From Mytilus edulis (lineage: Eukaryota): a stretch of DNA of 64,000 nt. Of the stretch, positions 16,501 to 59,827 are shown piece by piece. Position numbers and translations under genes: made by a program. Under the pieces are notes generated by a model. That model did not search any database. It had not been told where the DNA came from and worked only from the letters and a program-made list of their open reading frames with translations. Within the stretch, counting starts at the first letter, position 1, and each line of letters begins with the position of its first letter. Location of the stretch: NCBI RefSeq assembly GCF_963676685.1, contig NC_092355.1:30566001-30630000 (forward strand), written 5' to 3'.

Positions 16501-19500
16501 AGCTTCATCCTGTTCGTAATGTGATTTTATAGATACGAACCTTTTTAGCTCCATCCTGTTCGTAATGTGATTTAATAAATACGAACCTTTTTAGCTTCAT
16601 CCTGTTCGTAATGTGATTTTATAAATACGAACCTTTTTAGCTTCATCCTGTTCGAAATGTGATTTAACCATAGCAGTAAACACGTCCGATACAGTTTCAA
16701 TGATGACGTCACACTTTGTATTTTCCATATTATTTGAACCATACAATCCTGTTAAAATGTTAAAATGATTATAGAGAATATATGGGAGTCTGGTGGGGAT
16801 CTTCATTTTTTAAATTCTTTAAGTTTTGGCCATATTTCTCTATTTTTCATTTTTTTGTAAACTGAAAGCTGTTTGACACTTTGGTTCTCCATTTGATATT
16901 TGTGTTTATAATATTATATTGATTCAGCCAATATGATTGGTTAATTTATTAGTAGTTGGTTTTACCGCCATTTGCAGTACACATGGCTATATCGTGCCAA
17001 GACGAAGTGGTCGGAGTGATCTTAAGAGGATTTTGCATAGAAAATATAAACACATTAATTCTTAAATCCGTTGTTGGCATGATACAGGTTATGTTCTTCA
17101 CATAAATTTTATGATGATATGATACTACGGAATGTGCTGAAATCATATATGAGGAAGACATAATCTTCCAATTAATTTAATGGAAGTCTGAAGGTGGCAT
17201 ATCAGTATAGCTGCTTGTAGTACTTTTTGAATTTATGTATTGTTGTCATATTTTTGTTTTCTATTCTGACATCAAACTCGAACTTTTTTTAAAATTGAGA
17301 TTATCTGTGCGTATTGCTGTCTGTTTGTTAAGTCTACATTAGCCTAAGATATAAGGGGGGATTGAGATCTCACAAAAATTTTAAATCCCGCGGAATTATT
17401 GTGCGTGTCTTAGGCAAGGAGCTTCTAGCCTTTGCTATCTTTTATGTCCTTTTAATCTAAGTTCATTTATAATATACTTCAGAGTTTAAAGTGACGTCCA
17501 TTTCAACCGAACTAGTTCACAGTAGCCAGCTGAATCCCGTTTCCGGGTCCAGAATGTTTTCGCTGTGTTGAAAAAGCATTGGTGGCCGTGGGCTTTGAAC
17601 GACTAAAGGGCGAGGGTCCAAGCCTTTTTGAAGATAGTTTATCTTGCTTGAGAAATACCATAATACAAGAACACATTAACATTATTGGTCTGCCCTGCTT
17701 ACTTGAGTTGGAGGCTGTGCTATGACCTGTATTTGTTCATGTATTCGTGATTTAGTCTTCATTGGTATAGTCGACTCATTGGAAATCATTCCAAATCTCT
17801 TCATTTTATTGTAATTCGAGTTTAAAAATCCACAGTCGCTATAAACAGGTTTAAACTATTGAGATTGAGATATAACGTTGTTTTCTTATTCCGTTTAAAT
17901 AAAAGTGTTATTTGTATTTCAGAATTCGGCTTAGGTACACAAAACTGTTATATTTAAATATATGAAATATTATACTTTTAATTTTAGAAACAAGATGTAC
18001 TATGCATTTATGGGAAGTTAGGATAACCCCAGTCACACACTGCAAAAAACTATCAAAATGAAATATATGACAAGCACAAACAAATTGTATTATGCATTAT
18101 TATGTTAATAATATTCTTGTTTGTGCAATATAACATTAAAAAAAACAAAATAAAAAACAACAAAAAAACACAGTGAACGATTTTATCGATAAGCGATTTC
18201 CGAACCGTGATTTCAGAGACTTTAAATAAAACTTACCAAATTCACGAGCAAGGTATCGTGCAATAGCACCGGTCTGGTTAATCATTGTTTTATTATCCAC
18301 AGTCAATACAGGCATCTGACCATATGGTGTTTCTGAAATAAATCATCAACTCGAGGTTTTCAGCATTTTTTTTTTAAATTTTATTGCAATTAGCTTTGCA
18401 TGTGTTATTCATTTATATTGCTGTGAGGGTGACGATCTGATTTTTTTTGTATTTTTTTTGGCATCAACATATTTTGATTAATGCAGAAGGATATGCAGCT
18501 TTCAGTAACACATGAAAAAGTCTTTCGTTGATTTGACGTTATGACATGTACATTCATAAAAAGTTTGATTGCAATTAGTATAATTTTGACCTTTAAAGCT
18601 TAAGATTAAAAACGAGGACACCTTTAATCCCAATTACATATATGCCGTATATAAGCACTGTTATTTTATGTTTAAAAGAAATCTTGTACGAGGGTCTGTT
18701 TGAGATTATAACTGGTCGACAAAAATAGTAAAAAAAAAATTAATAAAATAAAACATTTTGATAATTTAAAAGGAATAAGTACCACAGCGAAAAATTGAAA
18801 AAAATAAAGCAGTTAGTGGAAAATAAAAACAGATTGTCTTCAAATCAAAAGAAAAGAAGGAGACAAAAAAAAATTGTTTGTTTCAGACCCTTCTGAATCG
18901 GTTAAACAACGGTTATATAATATAATATTGATACCTTATTGAATTAAATAGAAACAAAAATACATTGCGCTACTCATATACATGATAGTATCTTTAGAAT
19001 ATCGCATGTCTGTCTACGTTAACACCTGACTTAGTAAGGTATAGAACAATTATGTAAACAATAAAAATCTTATATCCTTCAATACATAAATACTATTATT
19101 TTAAACAACCAATAATTGACAGACAAAGGAACATAATTACTTATTAAAGAAGTAATATAAGCTCCCCTCCCCATTGAAGCAATCTTTAACATGTATATTT
19201 GAATTGACAGTCTGGCTTATGAATCTGCACATCAACTTTCTTCAAACATTTTATGTATCTGCTTTAATCTAGAAATTCCTAAAATGATTACATATATACT
19301 AAACAAATATATTTTTTTCTAGATAAACCCACTTGTTTGCCTTTATCATAGAGAGCTAATAAACAGCTATTGTTTAATTTTTTCCGAATATTTGTTCTCT
19401 TCTAATCAAATAAGCTATGTGAAGGTTCGGTATACAAAAAAACTAGTCCAAGGTTTTATAAACCTGTTTTCAGTTTGATTAGGTGCTTTGCACTGTACTT

Positions 19501-20454: not shown

Positions 20455-22161
20455 AAAATAGTTGAAAAGTGGAAGAAATTAAATGCAATTGATTGAAACC
20501 TGTTAATATTGCATCGCACCTTTATTTAAATAAAAAAATAAAAATAAAGTAAAATACTGAATACAATAAATAATTAATTGGGTTTGAATTGTTATAATAG
20601 CTCTTTAATTGTTCATAATTATAGTGTTTTAAATGTTCATATCAAATGTTTTGTTAATTTCATATATTATTGATAGTGATAGTTATTTTCACAATATTTC
20701 AAACTGTTTTGTTTGAATAGAAAAAAAACCCGATTTTATTTGATTGAAGAGGGATCGAAGAGGGAAAACGGACTTGACACAAGTTCAAATTTTATTAATT
20801 AACCGTCTATAATGCATGATCTAAAGCAACACTATGTCATAAACACAACAAAACAGCTTTAACTTTAATAAATAAAACTCTTTTATCTGTTTTAATATAT
20901 AACTTCAAATTGAGGAGGGCGAATGCCCTTTACGGATCCTTGTAAATCCGCAATTGGATATAACTATCAGAGTTCCTTACAAGACTGAAACGATGTGTCT
21001 AAGTTTTTCAGACTAGATGACAATTCAAACATTACCATTGAGATGTAGTGTTAGTAAAAGACGGGCAAAAGATACCATAGGGACATTCTAACTCATTGAT
21101 CGAGATAAAAGTGACAACGCCATGGCTAAAAATGAAAAAGACAAACATATAAATTATAGTACATAAGGCACAACCTTTGAAAAATAAAGACCATGCAACA
21201 CGAACCCAACTGAAAACTGGGGCTGATCTCAGGTGCTCCAAAAGGGTAAGCAGATCCTGCTCCACATGTGGCACCTGTCATGTTGCTCGTGTTATTACAA
21301 ACCCGGGTATTAGTCTTATTCGGTAGGTCACATTCATGGAAAGAGAATGTGATTGTAGTTACGACAGTAGGAATATATCCGATATTATCTGTGAAACGGA
21401 TATTCCGTAACGTTCAATCAACTCGTGATGGCGGCCGTAAAATTTAGGAAGGGATGATTTTAACTTCACCATTTGGAACTCTTGATTTCATAACTTCCTT
21501 CTGACCTACAATAATCACGAAATAGACATTTTGTTCGCCTGTCCCGAGTTGTTAGTCTTGTATTTTTTTTTAAATTTTATTCAATTTTATATGTTTTGGA
21601 GTTTACTATGACGTCTATTTTCACTGAACAAGTACTCATTTTTTTTGGGACCAGCTTAGTTCCACCCCTGTGTTCGGGATTCTCTCAATGCGTTGACGAC
21701 CCATTAGTGGCCTTCGGCTGTTATCTGCTCTTTGATTGGGTTTTTGTCTTTTTGACATATTCCCCATTTCCATTCCCAAATTTATTTTTGAAAGCAATTC
21801 CGTATTCGATCAGAGTTAGATCCAACTGGACCTTTTGTTACTCTTCAAGTGTGGGGTAAGTGTGACGTGAACAATGTTTGTGAGAAACCAGTGTATTAAC
21901 CATTGCCTATAAAACATGATCAATTGAGATAAGAAAAATGTGTTCCAGGAAAGTTGGTTTGTTTAATGTACATAATTCAAATAACTAAGGCGAGTGGAAT
22001 GAGCAACAAAGTGTTATTAGGGGTTGGATGTATGGGTCTTCATGCCATTTAGCCATCTTTATTTGTTGTGCTTATTTATTTTTATTCTTTATTTTTGCCC
22101 TTTAATCTCCTCTTCCTGTCCATTATTCTATATTCTGTAAAGCTCATATTAGTGCATTCAT

Positions 22162-22979: not shown

Positions 22980-25900
22980 TTACAAGTCCGAAGCCGGTCG
23001 CTTCTCTAAATATTTTTGTATATTAGCATTTGTTTTCACACTTTCGTAAAACTTTTTGACTGCAGCAAAGTCTTTGTACACCCCTTCACCCATCTTTGGA
23101 TTACAAGTTAGTCTATCGAGCATGTCAAAAACAGCCATATCTGCGACAGTCAACTAAAAATAATAAAAAAAGAGAGAATAACATCATGTGCTTACTTTCC
23201 CCATTTTTTTCTAATGATTTCATGAAAGTTTTCCGAAAGAATGGCATTACTATAGGAAAGGCTTCATTTGTTTTGAAAGAATGGTATAACTATACAAAAT
23301 GCTTCAACTTTTACGAAAGAATGGTATCACTATACCAAAGGCTTCAACTTTTACGAAAGAATGGTATTACTATACCAAAGGCTTCAACTTTTACGAAAGA
23401 ATGGTATTACTATACCAAAGGCTTCAAATTTTACGAAAGAATGGTATTACTATACCAAAGGCTTCAACTTTTACGAAAGAATGGTATTACTATACCAAAT
23501 GCTTTAACGTTCCCAAAATAGTGATGTTTCTATAGGAAAGGCTTCGACTTTTACGAAAGAATGGTATTTCTATACAAATTGCTCCAAAGTTTCCCAAAAA
23601 ATGGTGTTACTTTACCAAAATCTTCTATGTTTCCAAATTAATGGTGGTACTTTAACAATGGCTTCAACGTTTCCAAAATAATGGTGTTACTTTACCAAAA
23701 GCTTCTACGTTTCCAAAATAATGGTGGTACTTTAACAAAGGCTTCAGCGTTTCCCAAATAATGGTGTTACTTTACCAAAAGGCTTCAACTTTTCCGATAT
23801 TATTGTGTAAATATGCCTAATATTTCAAGACAACTGTTTGGTTAAAATGGTAAAAACTGCATAAATTATCTACTGTTAATATTTTAACGGATTTCAGCCG
23901 ATAAAGCATTTTGAATGACAAAATATTTAAGGAAGACACCATTTTGACTTCAAATTAACCACGCCATCAAGAAACTTACTTGTGGAAGTGTTATTATGAC
24001 AACACTAACCACCTATAAACATTAGGTCCGACCAGACTGTACTTAACCTTATTAGAAAACGAATTGTCAGCAGTCCATTGATTTAGGAGCTAAATATCAT
24101 CAAAACTGTCTTCATATTTAGTACCTATTTGCTTGAAAAATTGAATATAACTAAAATAATGATTTTTTATTCCATATTTGGCTTTAAAAAGTATATTGAC
24201 TTCTGGCCTCGGCGTGTATACCTTTTCAGAGGACTGACAATTTCCAGATTATATTGCCTTTTCATATGTTTGTTACCTCTGATCCTACGAGAAATTTTCC
24301 ACCATTTTCTTTCAATAACTTGCACAAATATGTGAAAAATTGAGGTAGAATCTCGGTACTGAACTTTTTAGCCAGCTCTTCCTGAAATACAGAAACAAAT
24401 TAAGTGAACAGTACAAATTTTCAAATCACTGAGAAATAAATAAATCAAATAAAAGTCCATGAAGCTCTGTAAACAGAATGGGTTTTTCTTGTTGTTGAAT
24501 GCCGTACTGTGACATAATATTGCTTATATTCACGTTATTTTAACGAACTCTTTTGAATTGTGATCTAATTGGCAATCATACCACATCTCCTTATTATCAT
24601 AAAAACTAGACAAAATATTCTAGTAGTCTCACGACTGTTATTCTCTGTGATACATTTTACTTTTAGAACGTAGATGTGTAGATGTGATTTAGATAAACGG
24701 TCCTGATGCTCTTTTTTGTTCAGATTTTCGTAGGCAAATCGGTCTTGATGCCAGTTCTCGTAGGTTAATAGGTCTTGATGCCAGTTCTCGTAGGTAAATT
24801 GGTCTTAATGCCAGTTTTCGTAGGTAAATCAGTCTTGATGCCAGTTTTCGTAGGTAAATCGGTTTTGATGCCAGTTTTAGTAGGTAAGTCAGTCTTGATG
24901 CCAGTTTTCGTAGGTAAATCTGTCTTGAAGCAAGTTCTCGTAGGCAGATTAGTCTTGATGTCAGTTCTCGTAGGTAAATCGGTCTTGCTGCCAGTTTTGT
25001 AGGTAAATTGGTTTTCATACTCTATATATAGTTGTATGATGCTGAATATTATGGAGATTCGTGTAGATATATTCATTCCTTGATACTATATACAGGGTGT
25101 TTAATTAAGTTAAAGCGCGAATACAAGATGGGGCCTACCCCAGTCAATTAACCAATATACCAGTATTTTATTGTTAGCTATCTTTCTATCTTGCAATACC
25201 GTCCATCATATCGTTCGACCCTTTTTATTCTTTTTGTTACCGATTGAATTTTGTGATTCCCCTTTTTAATTCGAAATATTACTTTTTCTTTTAAATTATT
25301 ATGTCAATACGCTCAGATTTGTATGACCACCTAAGAGACAACATGCCATCATTCAAATATTAATACATTATTCATTAATACATTGTTCAAATAAGGCTTT
25401 CGAAAATAGTGGAATTAATTACTTTTGGAGTGTCAAGAACTCGTTGGGAGTACTTGATAAATTGCATGCTTGTATTGGTGATTTTGAATCTGATCAAAGT
25501 TTTGATTTTTCTACCCTGTATACCATATTGCCTCACATTCTCATTAAGAAAAAAATCACCCACCTAATTAAATGGGCATTTAAAAAAGTCAGAATGTGAA
25601 TATATATGTTCAAACTCTTTAAGGTCATTTTTTAGTAGCAATAAACCAAAAAACTATGTCAATTGGACATGCTTTGATACAATATATGCCCTTGAATTTT
25701 TACTAGATAACATTTTTGCTCGCTTTGGAGATTCCGTATATCGTCAGGTTATCGGAATTCCAATAGGGACTAACTGTGCACCACTTATTGCGGACCTGTT
25801 TTTGTATTGCTATGAGTTACAATTTATGACAAAAATCAGCAAAGACCCATCGAAACAACATCTGATAAACAAATTTAATAATACTTTTAGATATTTGGAT

Positions 25901-28900
25901 GACATTTTGGCTCTCAATATTGACGACTTCAGTATATATACTAAAGAAACTTATCCTGTTCAACTTACTTTAAATAAAGCTAATACTAACAATGACCACT
26001 GCCCTTTCCTCGATCTTGATATCTATATCACTAACGGAAAGCTTAATACTAAAATTTATGATAAAAGAGATGATTTTCATTTCCTATCGTTAATTATCCA
26101 TTTTTAGATGGTGACGTTCCCTTGTCACCATCTTACGGTGTTTATATATCTCAACTTGTACGATTCACTCGTGTTTGTAACTATGTTTTAGATTTTAACG
26201 AGAGAAATTTATATATTACTGAAAAATTATTACACCAGGGTTTTCGATATCACAAACTAGTCAAAACATTTACTAAATTTTATCATCGGTATAAGGACAT
26301 CATTCGTAAATATAGCTCAACATGCAGACTTCTTATACGTTTAGGTATTTCACATCCATTTTTTTATGGTAATATTCTTAATAAAGCACAAAAATGTCAG
26401 TATTCACCGCAGAAACTAACAAAACCCTTAAATAGACTTATTAAGAAGGGATATAGTTACGATACTGTTGTCAGGTCATTAAAGATTGCATATTTTGGCG
26501 TTAATATTGATTCACTTATAGGGTCTTTGCATCGGAACTAAACACATTTATTTAAAAAAACAGTTGTTGGCATGACACGGGTTATGTTCTTCTCATATAT
26601 GTTATGATGGTATGATACTAAACCCCTAACGGGAAGGATTGTGCCTGATATTCATATGATGAAATCCTAATCTTTAAATCAGTTTAATTGAAGTCTGGAG
26701 CTGACATGTCAGTTAACTGCTAGTAGTCTGTTGTTATTTATGTATAATTGTCATATTGTTTATTTTCTTTGTTTTCATCTTCTGACATCAGACTTGGACT
26801 TCTCTTGAATTGAATTTTAAATGTACGTATTGTTATGCATTTACTTTTCTGCATTGGCTAGAGGTATAGGGGGAGGGTTGAGATCTCATAAACATGTTTA
26901 ACCCCGCCGCATTTTTGCGCCTGTCCCAAGTCAGGAGCCTCTGGTCTTTGTTAGTCTTGTAGTATTTTAATTTTAGTTTCTTGTGTACAATTTGGAAATT
27001 AGTATGGCGTTCATTATCACTGAACTAGTATATAATTGTTTAGGGGCCAGCTGAAGGACACCTCCGGATGCGGGAATTTCTCGTTACATTGAAGACCTGT
27101 TGCTGACCTTCTGCTGTTGTTTTTTCTATGGTCGGGTTGTTGTCTCTTTGATACATTTTCAATTTCCATTCTCAATTTTATTAATATGAATTGTTAGCCC
27201 TACCCCTGAAGTTATTTGCCATATTGGAGTCTTTATCTTATATTTAACCATGTGAGACAGGTTCATGATAGAATGTTAATCGTATTGATTTTTTTATAGT
27301 TAGTATTTAACGCCACCTTTAGCTTTATTGTCTATTATTGGCGGTCAGCCGGAGTGCCCGGTGAGAACTACGGATATTTGGTCGAAAAACTTACAATCCT
27401 AGTCAATAAAGGTTGAGGTCAAACACAACCTGCTACATGCGGGAACTCATAACATCAGCAATATAGTAGATAAACTACTATGACCATTCGGTCGCCCGAG
27501 GCCCCACATTTTATCTTACAATAAATTTGTTAATTGTTTATTTGTAATGTTCTTTTATATACATATTTTATTTGTTATTGTTTCTTATTTTGATTATAAA
27601 TACGAACCTTAATAGCTTCATCCTTTTCTAAATGTTGTTTAATGGCAGCACTGTACAGGTCAAATACAGTTTCAATGATGATGTCACACTTTGTATTTTC
27701 CATATTATTTGAACCATACAATCCTGTTAAATAGTTGAAGTGTCATGTAGAATATGTGGGTGTCTTGTGGGGATCTTTATTTCTACATTCTTTAAGTTTA
27801 AGCCATGTTTCTCTATTTTATATTTTTGTTAAACTGAAAGCTCTCAGACAATATCGGTTCTTCATTTTTAATTGTGTTTGATAAAATCACTATAAATCAG
27901 CATCTTCGATTAGTTGACTCTTTGATAGTTGATATTTCCACCTCTTTCAGTACGGTTGGTTATATCGGGGAAGCCAGGAAGGAGGTAGCCGAATTGCCCA
28001 AAAGAGAACCACCGACCTTTGTCAGTAAACATGACAGTCTTAATCAATGAGACTTGTTAAAATTGGAATCGGACTCAAAACGCCAGTGTTGACAGGCTAG
28101 TGATACAGGAAATGAACAACCAAGGGCCGACGGTCCAAGTCTCTTTGACAATACTTTATCTCGCTGGAGAGATATAATAAGAAAACATTATTATTATTGG
28201 TCTTCCCTGCTTACTTTATGGTTTGTTAGAGACCGTGCAAAGACCTGCAATTGTTCGTATACTTCTTCGTGGGTAAAGTTGACTCTTTGGAAATCATACC
28301 ACATATCTTCATTTTTATACTAATTTAAATTTTACAATCCACAGTCACTATAAATAGGATTAAGCTACATGTATTGATATAGCACATTTTTTATTCTATT
28401 TTCACTAAATGTGTTATTTTTATTTTATAATCTGGCTTAAGGTACACACAGATAAACTGTTGATATTTTGTACTGTAAATTTTAGTAGGCAACTTTTGGG
28501 ATGAACCAGATATTGTGTTGATTAGAAGATGTCTTGACCTCAGTAACACACTCAAAACAGCTAACAACACAAAAGATATAGGAAGAACTAATAACTTGTA
28601 TTACAAAATGTTTTGTTTAGAGATGTACTCGTTATTTTAAATATAAGATTTTAACGCAGAAAAAGAAAAAAAAAACCCATAGTAAACCATGTTATTGATT
28701 AGCAAATTCCGAATTGTGCTTTCGAACTTCATACAAAACTTACCAAATTCACGAGCAAGGTACCGGATAATGGCACCCGTCTGGTTTATCATTGTTTTAT
28801 TATCTACAGTTAATACAGGCATCTGACCATAAGGTGTTTCTAAAAAAGACCATCAACTTTTGTTGCAATTAACTTTACATGTGGTCTTTATCTATCTTGC

Positions 28901-39719: not shown

Positions 39720-41118
39720 ATATGTTCTTGTCATATATTTTATGATGGTATAATACTAAACCCCTAACGGGAAGAATTGTGCTTGATATTCATATGATTT
39801 CAACCAGTTTAATTGAGGTCTGGAGTTGACATGTCATGAACTGCTAGTAGTCCTTTGTTAATTTATGTATAATTGTCATTTTGTTTAGTTTCTTTTGTTA
39901 CCTATTCTGACATTGGACTCGGACGTCTCTTAAACTGAGTTTTAGTATGCTTACTGTTCTGCGTTTGTTTTTTTGGTCTTTGTTAGTCTTGTATGATTTT
40001 TTTATTTTAGTTTCTTGTGTATAATTCGGAGTTTAGTCATGCGCGTAGCTACGTTTACGTTAAAACGCCCGGACATACACTTGAATTTGGTAAAACAAAA
40101 TATTTTCATCTAGATATTATTAAAAGAATTGGTTAACAGTACATCAACCTTCTAAGTCTTTCTTCAATTGCTTGTAATTTGGAATAAAAATGACAAAATT
40201 GGTGTCATACATGTATTTATATATTTGTTCATTTTCTGTCAAAGTCTAAATCTACCGTGATTTCTATACTCGCATCATGCGCATCATGACGAAATTATAT
40301 ATGATGAATTTTCCCGTATTCATGGGTTTTTAAAAGGAATTTCTTGAAGTATTTACATTCTGAGGTTAAAATTTGGTACTTATAAATTATTTGTAAAACC
40401 GTGGTCAAAGTTTATGAAACTTTCTTGGAGGAAAACGCGTATAGCACAAGAATAAATTTCCATTCTGGTATCTATGATGTCGAGTTAATTTACATGATAA
40501 ATTTATAAACCTCCATATTTTGTCATGAAACTTGTGCAGAAATTAAATGAAAACATTTCTTTTGTTTAAATCCTGTAATGGACTGATAAATGAATAAACT
40601 TTTCGCGGGGAGGAATTTCAGGCGAGAGTTAGGGTTCCATTTACACACTTTAATATTGCACATGAACAACTCAGAAAATTAATCATTTCCGAGTCATGTT
40701 CATTTACGATTCTAAATAGACTATGAATAGGTTAAACATAAAAAAAGTAACCATTTTGAATCTAAAGAATGTTGTTATTGATATGAGTTTTCAATGACAG
40801 GAATGGTATGTCATTCTCGGTAATTTTAAAACTTACGGAGGCTTAGCATCCGCTCATCTACATTGGCCTGGATCCAATAGGGCCTGACCGAGGTTCGGGC
40901 GTACACTTGAAAATGACCTAGCTACGCCACTGTTAGTATGACGTCTATTATCACTGAACTAGTAACTTATTTGTTTAGGGGCCGGCTGAAAGACTCCTCC
41001 GGGTGCGGGAGTTTCTCGCTGCATTGAAGACCCATTGGTTGCCTTCGTCTGTTGTCTGCTATATGGTCGGGTTGTTGTCTCTTTGACATATTCCCCATTT
41101 CCATTCTCAATTTTACTG
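39720..41118 (+). mobile_element. 3'-UTR fragment of the same Penelope-like family (carries SECIS-like hairpin at ~39725-39798), interrupted by a DNA element
   Basis: Colinear similarity to 26583-27178, ending in CCCCATTTCCATTCTCAATTTTA. Confidence 0.8.
40038..40932. mobile_element. Non-autonomous DNA transposon nested in the Penelope-like fragment
   Basis: Imperfect TIRs CATGCGCGTAGCTA / TAGCTACGCCACTG; 5-bp TSD TTAGT (40033-40037, 40933-40937); host sequence resumes exactly after it. Confidence 0.8.
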
Positions 41119-59421: not shown

Positions 59422-59827
59422 GTACCGATTATCAGGTTGTCTGCATGTCGATATCGTAAAATATCAGCTGCGAGACATAATATGAAGCTTTTTGTCGAGT
59501 AAGCGCAGCGAACGAGATCAAAAAGCCTTCATATTATGTCGAGCAGCTGATATTTTACAATATTAAAATGCCGATAACCTGATAATCGATTTATCGGGCT
59601 GTATTTGCGTCTTTTGGAAGTATTGTCTTAGTTTCACCAGCAACCGGAAGTTGACTTGATAAGCTCGTGTCAAACTTATCAACGTCGGTTCAAACATTAT
59701 GACGTCGCTGATATGTCCGGGTCAAAGTTATTTAGGCCAGGTCAACGTATTTGACGTCACAAAGCCGTGATATGGAGTTTTATTAAGAGTTGAGCAGATT
59801 GATATAGACAGTTGGACGACCGATAAA
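59422..59827. mobile_element. Hairpin-ended insertion nested in an interspersed repeat (59255-59985)
   Basis: Hairpin with ~65-bp arms at 59426-59588, followed by TTTATCGG...CCGATAAA inverted repeat. Confidence 0.65.

What the first reader, a model, noticed from the sequence alone, without database searches (positions are those of the whole stretch)
25366..27178. Retrotransposon with a SECIS element in its 3' UTR: candidate selenoprotein-encoding Naiad-type family
Seen: a Penelope-like RT whose ORF stops after the thumb region with no C-terminal endonuclease and with a long insert between motifs A and B. About 60 nt after the stop lies a hairpin with every eukaryotic SECIS hallmark: helix I, AUGA...GA kink-turn core, 11-bp helix II, unpaired AAA and a type-II mini-stem (26586-26664). 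Established: Naiad Penelope-like elements have an N-terminal GIY-YIG domain and a C-terminal RT with an insertion-in-fingers domain, and some Naiads in spiders and clams encode selenocysteines. Inference: full-length members of this family recode UGA as Sec, tying retrotransposition to selenium supply. This copy lacks the N-terminal half and I see no in-frame UGA in the retained RT, so Sec codons cannot be shown here.
Basis: partly seen in the sequence, partly recalled or inferred. Interest (0 to 1): 0.88.

Follow-up and report, generated by a model that had tools for sequence, protein, structure and literature searches.

The report
Dead selenoprotein-coding Naiad retrotransposon copy
This is a broken, 5'-truncated copy of a mussel retrotransposon family whose full-length members use four UGA codons for selenocysteine and carry the required SECIS hairpin in the 3' UTR; such elements were known from clams and spiders, so this adds mussels.

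Summary
Window 25376-27182 (+) is the 3' 1.8 kb of a ~3.95 kb Penelope-like Naiad element. It has the RT C-terminal part (aa 615-1002, two frameshifts), a TAA stop, and 52 nt later a SECIS-like hairpin (Rfam SECIS_1 31.7 bits, just under the 35-bit cut-off).

Full-length copies in the same genome carry an N-terminal GIY-YIG nuclease, a C-terminal RT and four shared in-frame TGA codons. All four align to near-invariant cysteines of Naiad homologues. The host has tRNA-Sec genes.

In 80 related metagenome contigs, TGA recurs only at five Cys columns, and terminators in complete frames are always TAA or TAG. A generic SECIS model hits 12 of 18 TGA-bearing contigs and 0 of 19 Cys-only ones. The hairpin shows compensatory changes in 15 of 20 pairs.

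This window copy is dead, although its SECIS matches the commonest form among the copies read. Selenoprotein-coding Naiads were described in 2021 (clams, spiders). Mussels, a type-II-like SECIS and a fifth Sec site in relatives are extensions, not a new principle. The scan had already noted this family elsewhere in this genome. Sec insertion itself is untested.

The parts
25376..27182 (+). 5'-truncated, decayed copy of a ~3.95 kb Naiad-type Penelope-like retrotransposon (3' 1.8 kb only)
   Evidence: Homology limits to 30 other copies at 93-97% identity. Longer copies run further 5'.
25375..26538 (+). RT C-terminal coding remnant, aa 615-1002 of the family ORF, in three frame pieces (25375-25587, 25580-26083, 26074-26538), so two frameshifts
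   Evidence: tblastn of the family ORF against the window and translations. Motifs FDFSTLYT (A), IGIPIGTNCAP (B), RYLDD (C) and FLDLD are visible.
26539..26541 (+). TAA terminator of the family ORF
   Evidence: TAA in most of the 46 matches covering this site; exceptions are 3 TAT and 2 TGA rows, some rows being the same copy fetched twice. Complete frames in metagenome relatives end in TAA or TAG, never TGA.
26594..26658 (+). SECIS element, type-II-like: helix I, AUGA 26604-26607, 10-bp helix II, AAA 26620-26622, mini-stem, GA 26647-26648
   Evidence: Rfam SECIS_1 31.7 bits over the full model. Own model R1 63 bits at 26590-26664. Matches the commonest form among the family copies read. Covariation across relatives.
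26659..27182 (+). Remaining 3' UTR and tail of the element; this end is shared by most copies
   Evidence: Copies end at about 27180-27196 in window coordinates; 3' junctions. The tail is also shared with related fragments at 21549-21789 and 40933-41115.

Best explanation
Window 25376-27182 is a dead-on-arrival, 5'-truncated insertion of a young, high-copy Naiad Penelope-like retrotransposon of a mussel-like bivalve genome. The family's single ~1002-codon ORF runs N-terminal GIY-YIG endonuclease, CxC linker, then RT. It contains four UGA codons that replace conserved cysteines: the second Cys of the CX4CxxC finger (aa 55), the Cys before GIY (aa 86), the first Cys of the CCHH finger (aa 97), and the Cys eight residues after DKA (aa 522). 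The hairpin 52 nt after the TAA stop is a eukaryotic SECIS. Inferred mechanism: in the element's mRNA the SECIS recruits SBP2, eEFSec and Sec-tRNA(Sec), so all four UGAs are read as selenocysteine and the full EN-RT selenoprotein is made. Without Sec decoding, translation would stop at codon 55. Target-primed reverse transcription from the 3' end often aborts. This leaves truncated copies like this one, which keep the SECIS and tail but cannot encode anything. Shown here: the architecture, the conserved TGAs at Cys columns, a frame kept through them, SECIS covariation and its association with TGA, host tRNA-Sec genes, and RNA-seq reads laid over the family at 92% likeness or more. Not shown: actual Sec insertion and its dependence on selenium.
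For: Family structure. There are 788-1390 first-look candidates per probe, and the scored copies are 91-100% identical to the probes. Full-length copies are ~3.95 kb with upstream partial tandem tails, i.e. pLTRs.

TGA sites. TGA is present at aa 55 in 6 of 9 unique copies, aa 86 in 9 of 9, aa 97 in 9 of 9 and aa 522 in 21 of 22. Private stops are TAA, TAG or CGA>TGA. The four sites align to Cys in 22/24, 27/28, 28/29 and 39/40 aligned full-length homologues. Those homologues carry an N-terminal Pfam GIY-YIG and a C-terminal RVT_1.

Metagenome relatives. Complete frames contain only TGA as internal stops (2-6 of them) and end in TAA or TAG, while Cys-only controls have none. The recurrent stop columns 55, 86, 97, 385 and 522 hold 85 TGA and no TAA or TAG.

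SECIS. The generic Rfam SECIS_1 model hits the + strand just 3' of the ORF in 12 of 18 TGA-bearing contigs and 0 of 19 Cys-only contigs of equal total length, Fisher p = 1e-5. RNAalifold recovers the SECIS fold from a plain MAFFT alignment. 15 of 20 pairs show compensatory change, 89.9% of cells pair against 36-52% when slid, and 0 of 500 shuffles reach this. AUGA (UUGA in one of the 12), AAA and GA are otherwise invariant.

Host and expression. tRNA-Sec scores 77-79.6 bits in five copies, and ARAGORN calls tRNA-SeC(tca). RNA-seq reads cover the whole element.

Precedent. Craig et al. 2021 (PMC8557442) report UGAs at the same sites in clam Naiads.
Against: No experiment shows Sec insertion. 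The Rfam score is below the gathering cut-off (31.7 against 35), and at that score chance hits are expected genome-wide (E 0.025 per 64 kb). SECISearch3 could not be run. aa 55 is TTA or TAA in 3 of 9 copies. None of the six full-length genomic copies read is fully intact. The RNA-seq coverage could come from read-through transcripts or DNA carry-over; depth rises steeply toward the 3' tail, and a sense-strand bias appears in only one of three libraries. The window copy itself is non-functional.
Confidence: 0.88

Rival explanations
1. The TGAs are real stops or are read through by near-cognate tRNAs (Trp, Cys, Arg). The element would then make separate or low-level products, and the hairpin would be a conserved 3' UTR structure with another role, such as template recognition by the RT, that only resembles a SECIS.
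For: No direct evidence of Sec insertion exists. The Rfam score is sub-threshold. The 3' UTR structures of retrotransposons are often conserved for RT recognition.
Against: Every recurrent internal stop is TGA and sits on a Cys column (85 TGA, 0 TAA or TAG). Terminators are never TGA. The invariant nucleotides are exactly the SECIS core, AUGA, AAA and GA. Cys-only Naiads lack any SECIS_1 hit (0 of 19), although they too need template recognition.
Confidence: 0.07
2. The hairpin and the TGAs are chance products of decay in an AT-rich dead repeat, with no recoding.
For: The folding energy is not better than shuffles (z = -1.31). The window copy is degraded. Chance SECIS_1 hits of about 32 bits are expected at roughly one per few Mb.
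Against: The same TGAs and the same hairpin occur in lineages of 45-99% aa identity with intact frames. Covariation is strong. The association with TGA has p = 1e-5.
Confidence: 0.01
3. This particular copy's SECIS has been taken over by a host gene and works at this locus, for example in a host 3' UTR.
For: Its SECIS matches the commonest form among the family copies read. Craig et al. proposed such donation as a route to new selenoproteins.
Against: No host ORF with an in-frame TGA was seen upstream. The flank is tandem repeat and other repeats. More than 150 equally good copies are spread over all chromosomes, so there is no reason to single this one out. Gene context and locus-specific expression were not tested.
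Confidence: 0.02

Closest known systems
Selenoprotein-encoding Naiads of clams (Naiad_Mmer from Mercenaria mercenaria, Naiad_Scon from Sinonovacula constricta), Craig et al. 2021, Mol Biol Evol 38:5005 (PMC8557442)
   Same: N-terminal GIY-YIG plus C-terminal RT in one ORF, with pLTRs and frequent 5' truncation. Three UGA sites are the same as in clams: the Cys before GIY-YIG, the first Cys of the CCHH finger, and the Cys eight residues after DKA. A SECIS follows a TAA or TAG terminator in the 3' UTR. The hosts are bivalves.
   Different: The host is a mussel-like genome, which the paper does not list as carrying Sec Naiads; the mussel Naiads it mentions have a 5-aa insert in the CX2-5CxxC finger that is absent here. 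There is a fourth UGA at the second Cys of CX4CxxC, a finger the paper reports as Sec-bearing only in spiders. The SECIS has a covarying mini-stem (type-II-like), whereas the paper reports type I. It starts 52 nt after the stop rather than 1-21 nt. The clam sequences themselves could not be aligned here.
Selenoprotein-encoding Naiads of spiders (Naiad_Smim, Naiad_Sdum from Stegodyphus), same paper
   Same: Multiple UGAs at conserved Cys, including the CX2-5CxxC finger, the pre-GIY Cys and DKA+8, with a 3' UTR SECIS.
   Different: Spiders use the first Cys, or the first and second, of the finger and not the CCHH Cys. The paper infers an origin independent of the clams. No spider sequence was available for comparison.
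Canonical eukaryotic SECIS (Rfam RF00031), as in SelP or GPx mRNAs
   Same: AUGA and GA kink-turn core, ~10-bp helix II, unpaired AAA, mini-stem, and a position in the 3' UTR downstream of in-frame UGAs. One SECIS serves several UGAs, as in SelP.
   Different: It is carried by a mobile element and copied more than 150 times (probably more than 1000) around the genome. Its score is slightly below Rfam's gathering threshold.

Membership tests
Naiad clade of Penelope-like elements | Single ORF with N-terminal GIY-YIG endonuclease and C-terminal RT (permuted order) | tested here: met
   Full-length copies read ...SIIYLLT[TGA]NKPGCGIQYVGET... near the N-terminus and have RT motifs at aa 560-860. 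Homologues carry Pfam GIY-YIG N-terminally and RVT_1 C-terminally. The window copy keeps only the RT C-terminal part.
Naiad clade of Penelope-like elements | CX2-5CxxC finger upstream of GIY-YIG, and CCHH cysteines inside it | tested here: met
   C-HAKK-[TGA]-LT-C, and T[TGA]NKPGC. These columns are Cys in homologues. The two His of CCHH were not examined.
Naiad clade of Penelope-like elements | CxC motif in the linker, and DKA motif | tested here: met
   TSCNCSNSEY and PADKAANN in the translation. The first CxC Cys is TGA in 15 related contigs.
Naiad clade of Penelope-like elements | Insertion-in-fingers domain between RT motifs A and B | tested here: inconclusive
   About 80 residues lie between FDFSTLYT and IGIPMGT, which fits an IFD. 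No structural or profile test was run.
Naiad clade of Penelope-like elements | pLTR (partial tandem) organisation and frequent 5' truncation | tested here: met
   Four of six full-length copies have an upstream partial 3' tail plus a conserved 46-nt junction. 5' ends vary while the 3' end is common.
Naiad clade of Penelope-like elements | No canonical hammerhead ribozyme | tested here: met
   No hammerhead family appeared at E <= 1-10 in the window region or in three full-length loci.
Naiad clade of Penelope-like elements | RT phylogeny placing it with named Naiads and apart from Chlamys, Neptune and Poseidon | not tested
   No named reference sequences were available from the tools. The tree holds only unnamed metagenome relatives.
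Eukaryotic SECIS element | AUGA...GA non-Watson-Crick quartet, helix II of about 9-12 bp, and unpaired AAR | tested here: met
   Rfam alignment. AUGA (UUGA in one of the 12), AAA and GA are otherwise invariant in 12 aligned relatives.
Eukaryotic SECIS element | Reaches the curated Rfam RF00031 gathering score | tested here: not met
   31.7 bits against 35. Relatives score 26.6-33.1 bits.
Eukaryotic SECIS element | Structure conserved by compensatory change, and found only with in-frame UGA genes | tested here: met
   15 of 20 pairs with compensatory change and 0 of 500 shuffles. 12 of 18 against 0 of 19 contigs.
Eukaryotic SECIS element | SECISearch3 grade; SBP2 binding; supports Sec insertion | not testable with these tools
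   There is no SECISearch3 here and no bench work.
Selenoprotein gene | In-frame UGA aligned to Cys in homologues, with the coding frame conserved downstream | tested here: met
Selenoprotein gene | Host has Sec decoding machinery | tested here: met
   Five tRNA-Sec genes score 77-79.6 bits, and ARAGORN calls tRNA-SeC(tca). SBP2, eEFSec and SPS were not searched.

The most novel reading that the evidence does not exclude
Two readings go beyond the 2021 description. First, Sec-coding Naiads form one large, old clade. All 32 rows with TGA at aa 522 fall in one well-supported clade of 39 rows. Its members share a homologous, covarying SECIS, carry 1-6 Sec codons, show repeated Sec/Cys exchange, and have a fifth Sec site in the CxC motif. 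Second, because each 5'-truncated insertion carries an intact SECIS to a new place, the element may make its own transposition depend on selenium supply. It may also seed host 3' UTRs with ready-made SECIS elements from which new selenoproteins could arise.
Probability: 0.2. Interest if true: 0.7.

Novelty: new member of a known kind. Interest (0 to 1): 0.45.

Why it matters
Selenoprotein-coding transposons have been reported from only four families, in two clams and two spiders. This finding shows the same recoding in a high-copy mussel family. Through the metagenome relatives it also shows that the trait belongs to a broad clade, with a covarying SECIS and a variable number of Sec codons. 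For annotation, Naiad ORFs in bivalves should not be called pseudogenes because of TGA. For selenoprotein prediction, genome-wide SECIS scans in these species will be swamped by hundreds of transposon-borne SECIS copies. It also gives a concrete set of dispersed, intact SECIS elements with which to test whether transposons donate SECIS elements to host genes.

Tried and rejected
- Pfam on the window's three ORF pieces and on two intact pieces of full-length copies gave nothing significant (RVT_1 13.9 bits). The RT identity rests on motifs and on homologues instead.
- The folding energy of the hairpin against shuffles was uninformative (z = -1.31).
- Within-family comparison of about 40 SECIS copies says nothing about selection, because the copies are young and as conserved as their flanks.
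- A third related tail at window 17032-17463 lacks the apical 14 nt of the SECIS, so it was not used as a covariation partner.
- The first MAFFT run on all 150 hits timed out and was redone on 41 long hits.
- Read laying listed only 40 of 465 variant places, so the letters read at the four TGA sites in RNA could not be checked.
- The clam and spider Sec-Naiad sequences of the paper were not compared, because they would have had to be typed in.
Full report
**What is in the window**

The region 25376-27182 (+) matches at least 30 other places of the same genome at 93-97% identity. All share a common 3' end near 27182 and have variable 5' ends. That is the signature of target-primed reverse transcription with 5' truncation.

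The window copy encodes only aa 615-1002 of the family ORF. The coding remnant lies in three frame pieces, which means two frameshifts. It ends at TAA 26539-26541. RT motifs A (FDFSTLYT), B (IGIPIGTNCAP), C (RYLDD) and FLDLD are visible. About 80 residues lie between A and B, and no endonuclease follows the RT.

Rfam SECIS_1 matches 26594-26658 (+) over the whole model at 31.7 bits. The cut-off is 35. E is 0.0018 in 4.5 kb and 0.025 in the window. The match shows:
- helix I;
- AUGA at 26604-26607;
- a 10-bp helix II with one A.G mismatch;
- AAA at 26620-26622;
- a CCC/GGG mini-stem;
- GA at 26647-26648.

The MFE fold agrees, but its energy is not exceptional.

**The full-length family**

Other copies extend 5' of the window copy's end. 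Six full-length copies of ~3.95 kb were fetched. Four of them are preceded by a partial 3' tail of another copy plus a conserved 46-nt junction, which is a pLTR arrangement.

The ORF is about 1002 codons. It opens with a CX4CxxC finger and a GIY-YIG domain, continues through a CxC linker (TSCNCS) and the DKA motif, and ends with the RT.

Four in-frame TGAs are shared among the copies:

| Site | Context | Unique copies with TGA |
|---|---|---|
| aa 55 | CHAKK[TGA]LTC | 6 of 9 |
| aa 86 | DIT[TGA]KTNSIIY | 9 of 9 |
| aa 97 | YLLT[TGA]NKPGC | 9 of 9 |
| aa 522 | DKAANNIIIV[TGA]RK | 21 of 22 |

Private stops are TAA, TAG or CGA>TGA, and the terminator is TAA. No hammerhead ribozyme was found.

**The TGAs sit on cysteines**

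A profile-free HMMER search with the 480-aa RT piece found 25,999 relatives at E <= 0.001. In an alignment with the 41 hits of at least 820 aa, the four sites are Cys in 22/24, 27/28, 28/29 and 39/40 aligned sequences. Those homologues carry Pfam GIY-YIG at the N-terminus and RVT_1 at the C-terminus. One named relative comes from the pearl oyster Pinctada imbricata; the others come from marine metagenomes.

**Independent lineages**

The search for related loci returned 80 metagenome contigs at 28-99% aa identity. The number of Sec codons at the four sites is graded:
- contigs at 93-99% identity (the same family) and some at 45-62% have TGA at all four sites;
- others have three, two or one;
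- most contigs at or below 44% identity have Cys at the covered sites; L131 (33%) and L137 (43%) are exceptions with TGA at aa 522.

Complete frames contain only TGA as internal stops (2-6 of them) and always end in TAA or TAG. Five Cys-only controls have no internal stop.

Across all contigs, the recurrent stop columns are our aa 55, 86, 97, 385 and 522. They hold 7, 14, 16, 15 and 33 TGA and no TAA or TAG. Column 385 is the first Cys of the CxC motif. It is Cys in the mussel family. The passages of Craig et al. read here do not list it among the Sec sites.

In an RT tree, all 32 rows with TGA at aa 522 fall in one clade of 39 rows (SH-aLRT 99). Four rows inside that clade, in three lineages (L068, L072, and L082 with L098), have Cys at aa 522. 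Of these, L072 still carries TGA at column 385.

**The SECIS is real**

The generic Rfam model was run at the same threshold on equal amounts of sequence. It finds a SECIS_1 match on the + strand just 3' of the ORF in 12 of 18 TGA-bearing contigs and in 0 of 19 Cys-only contigs. Fisher p = 1e-5.

A plain MAFFT alignment of 12 such hairpins keeps AUGA (UUGA in one of the 12), AAA and GA invariant. RNAalifold predicts the SECIS fold on its own. On that alignment:
- 89.9% of cells pair, against 36-52% when the partners are slid;
- 15 of 20 pairs show changes on both sides;
- 0 of 500 shuffles reach the observed values.

The larger model-fitted set of 25 distinct rows gives the same picture.

A covariance model built from these hairpins finds further instances in TGA-bearing contigs. 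It finds weak ones in the close relatives that have Cys at aa 522. In the host genome all 150 candidates that were scored matched at 52-70 bits, and they lie on all chromosomes. The window copy's SECIS matches the commonest form among the family copies read.

**Host and expression**

The genome has five tRNA-Sec genes at 77-79.6 bits. ARAGORN calls one of them tRNA-SeC with anticodon tca.

RNA-seq raw reads from three runs with the same species label cover the whole element. Depth is about 10-100 over the ORF and above 1000 at the tail. One library shows a 4-6-fold strand bias over the 5' half of the ORF, which would indicate sense RNA in a usual stranded library. The other two libraries show no bias. 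This shows that RNA-library reads of 92% likeness or more lie over the family. It does not show that autonomous full-length mRNAs are made.

**Mechanism**

Inferred: the SECIS in the element's own 3' UTR directs Sec insertion at four UGAs lying 1.5-2.9 kb upstream. This yields an EN-RT selenoprotein with Sec in both zinc-finger-like motifs, before GIY-YIG and after DKA. Failure to decode would terminate translation at codon 55. Retrotransposition then spreads the SECIS with every truncated copy.

The window copy lacks the promoter end, the nuclease and the first 614 codons, and it is frameshifted. It is therefore inert.

**Comparison with what is known**

Craig et al. 2021 (PMC8557442) described exactly this kind of element in two clams and two spiders. 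Those families have three or four UGAs at the pre-GIY Cys, at DKA+8, at the first CCHH Cys (clams) or in the CX2-5CxxC finger (spiders). Their type I SECIS lies 1-21 nt after the stop.

The mussel family has the three clam sites plus the second Cys of the finger. Its SECIS has a mini-stem and lies 52 nt after the stop. The paper mentions mussel Naiads only as Cys-bearing, with a 5-aa insert in the finger that is absent here.

Literature searches found no later report. The scan itself had already noted this family elsewhere in this genome, and the second SECIS in this window.

**Verdict**

This is a new member of a known kind, and the window copy is a dead relic. Sec insertion and selenium dependence remain to be shown.

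**Limits**

- SECISearch3 and named Naiad references were unavailable.

Noticed in passing
window 39732-39796 (+), within fragments 39721-40037 and 40933-41115: A second SECIS (Rfam 32.1 bits; R1 68.1 bits) sits in an 82-86% identical tail fragment that starts only about 10 nt 5' of the hairpin. Its three substitutions in helix II keep or improve pairing (G.U>A-U, G-C>G.U). A ~900-nt insertion splits the tail.
   Followed up: partly
window 17032-17463 (+) and 21549-21789: More distant tails of related elements, 71-73% identical. The copy at 17032 keeps AUGA and GA but lacks the 14 nt that hold the AAA and the mini-stem.
   Followed up: partly
L069, L072-L075, L077-L080, L087, L089, L094, L097, L131, L137 (metagenome contigs): A fifth recurrent Sec site: the first Cys of the Naiad CxC motif (our aa 385, Cys in the mussel family) is TGA in 15 related contigs. 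The passages of Craig et al. 2021 read here do not list it among the Sec sites.
   Followed up: partly
L068, L072, L082, L098 (metagenome contigs): Close relatives (58-80% aa) inside the Sec clade have Cys (TGT/TGC) at DKA+8 yet keep a weak SECIS-like match. L072 still has TGA at the CxC site. This suggests Sec-to-Cys reversal site by site.
   Followed up: partly
L057, L058, L059, L061 (full-length genomic copies), just 5' of the element start: A conserved 46-nt stretch (TTTTACAGAGTTTGTC...GTAGAGTG) joins the upstream partial tail to the 5' end. It is unclear whether it belongs to the 3' or the 5' end of the unit.
   Followed up: no
window 24700-25010 and 23096-23535: Tandem repeats lie just upstream of the insertion. 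One is a ~30-nt unit (ggtcttgatgccagttttcgtaggtaaatc). The other is a longer unit giving repeated ORF peptides (LLRKNGITIPKASTFTKEWYYYTKGFNFYERMV).
   Followed up: no
G000 C7:74.8-75.4 Mb; C1:49149863; C10:14401393-14442259: Four identical tRNA-Sec genes are spread over 0.56 Mb of C7, with one more on C1. Separately, C10 holds a tandem array of at least 40 units with a ~895-nt period, each scoring just under the tRNA-Sec cut-off (45.9 bits).
   Followed up: no
P0015 (1105 aa homologue): A Naiad EN-RT protein with a C-terminal ubiquitin hydrolase (UCH) match. It is probably a chimeric gene model.
   Followed up: no
window 59439-59574: A long palindromic hairpin matches several plant and animal miRNA families on both strands, well under their cut-offs (42.5 bits against 86). 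It is probably a MITE-like inverted repeat.
   Followed up: no
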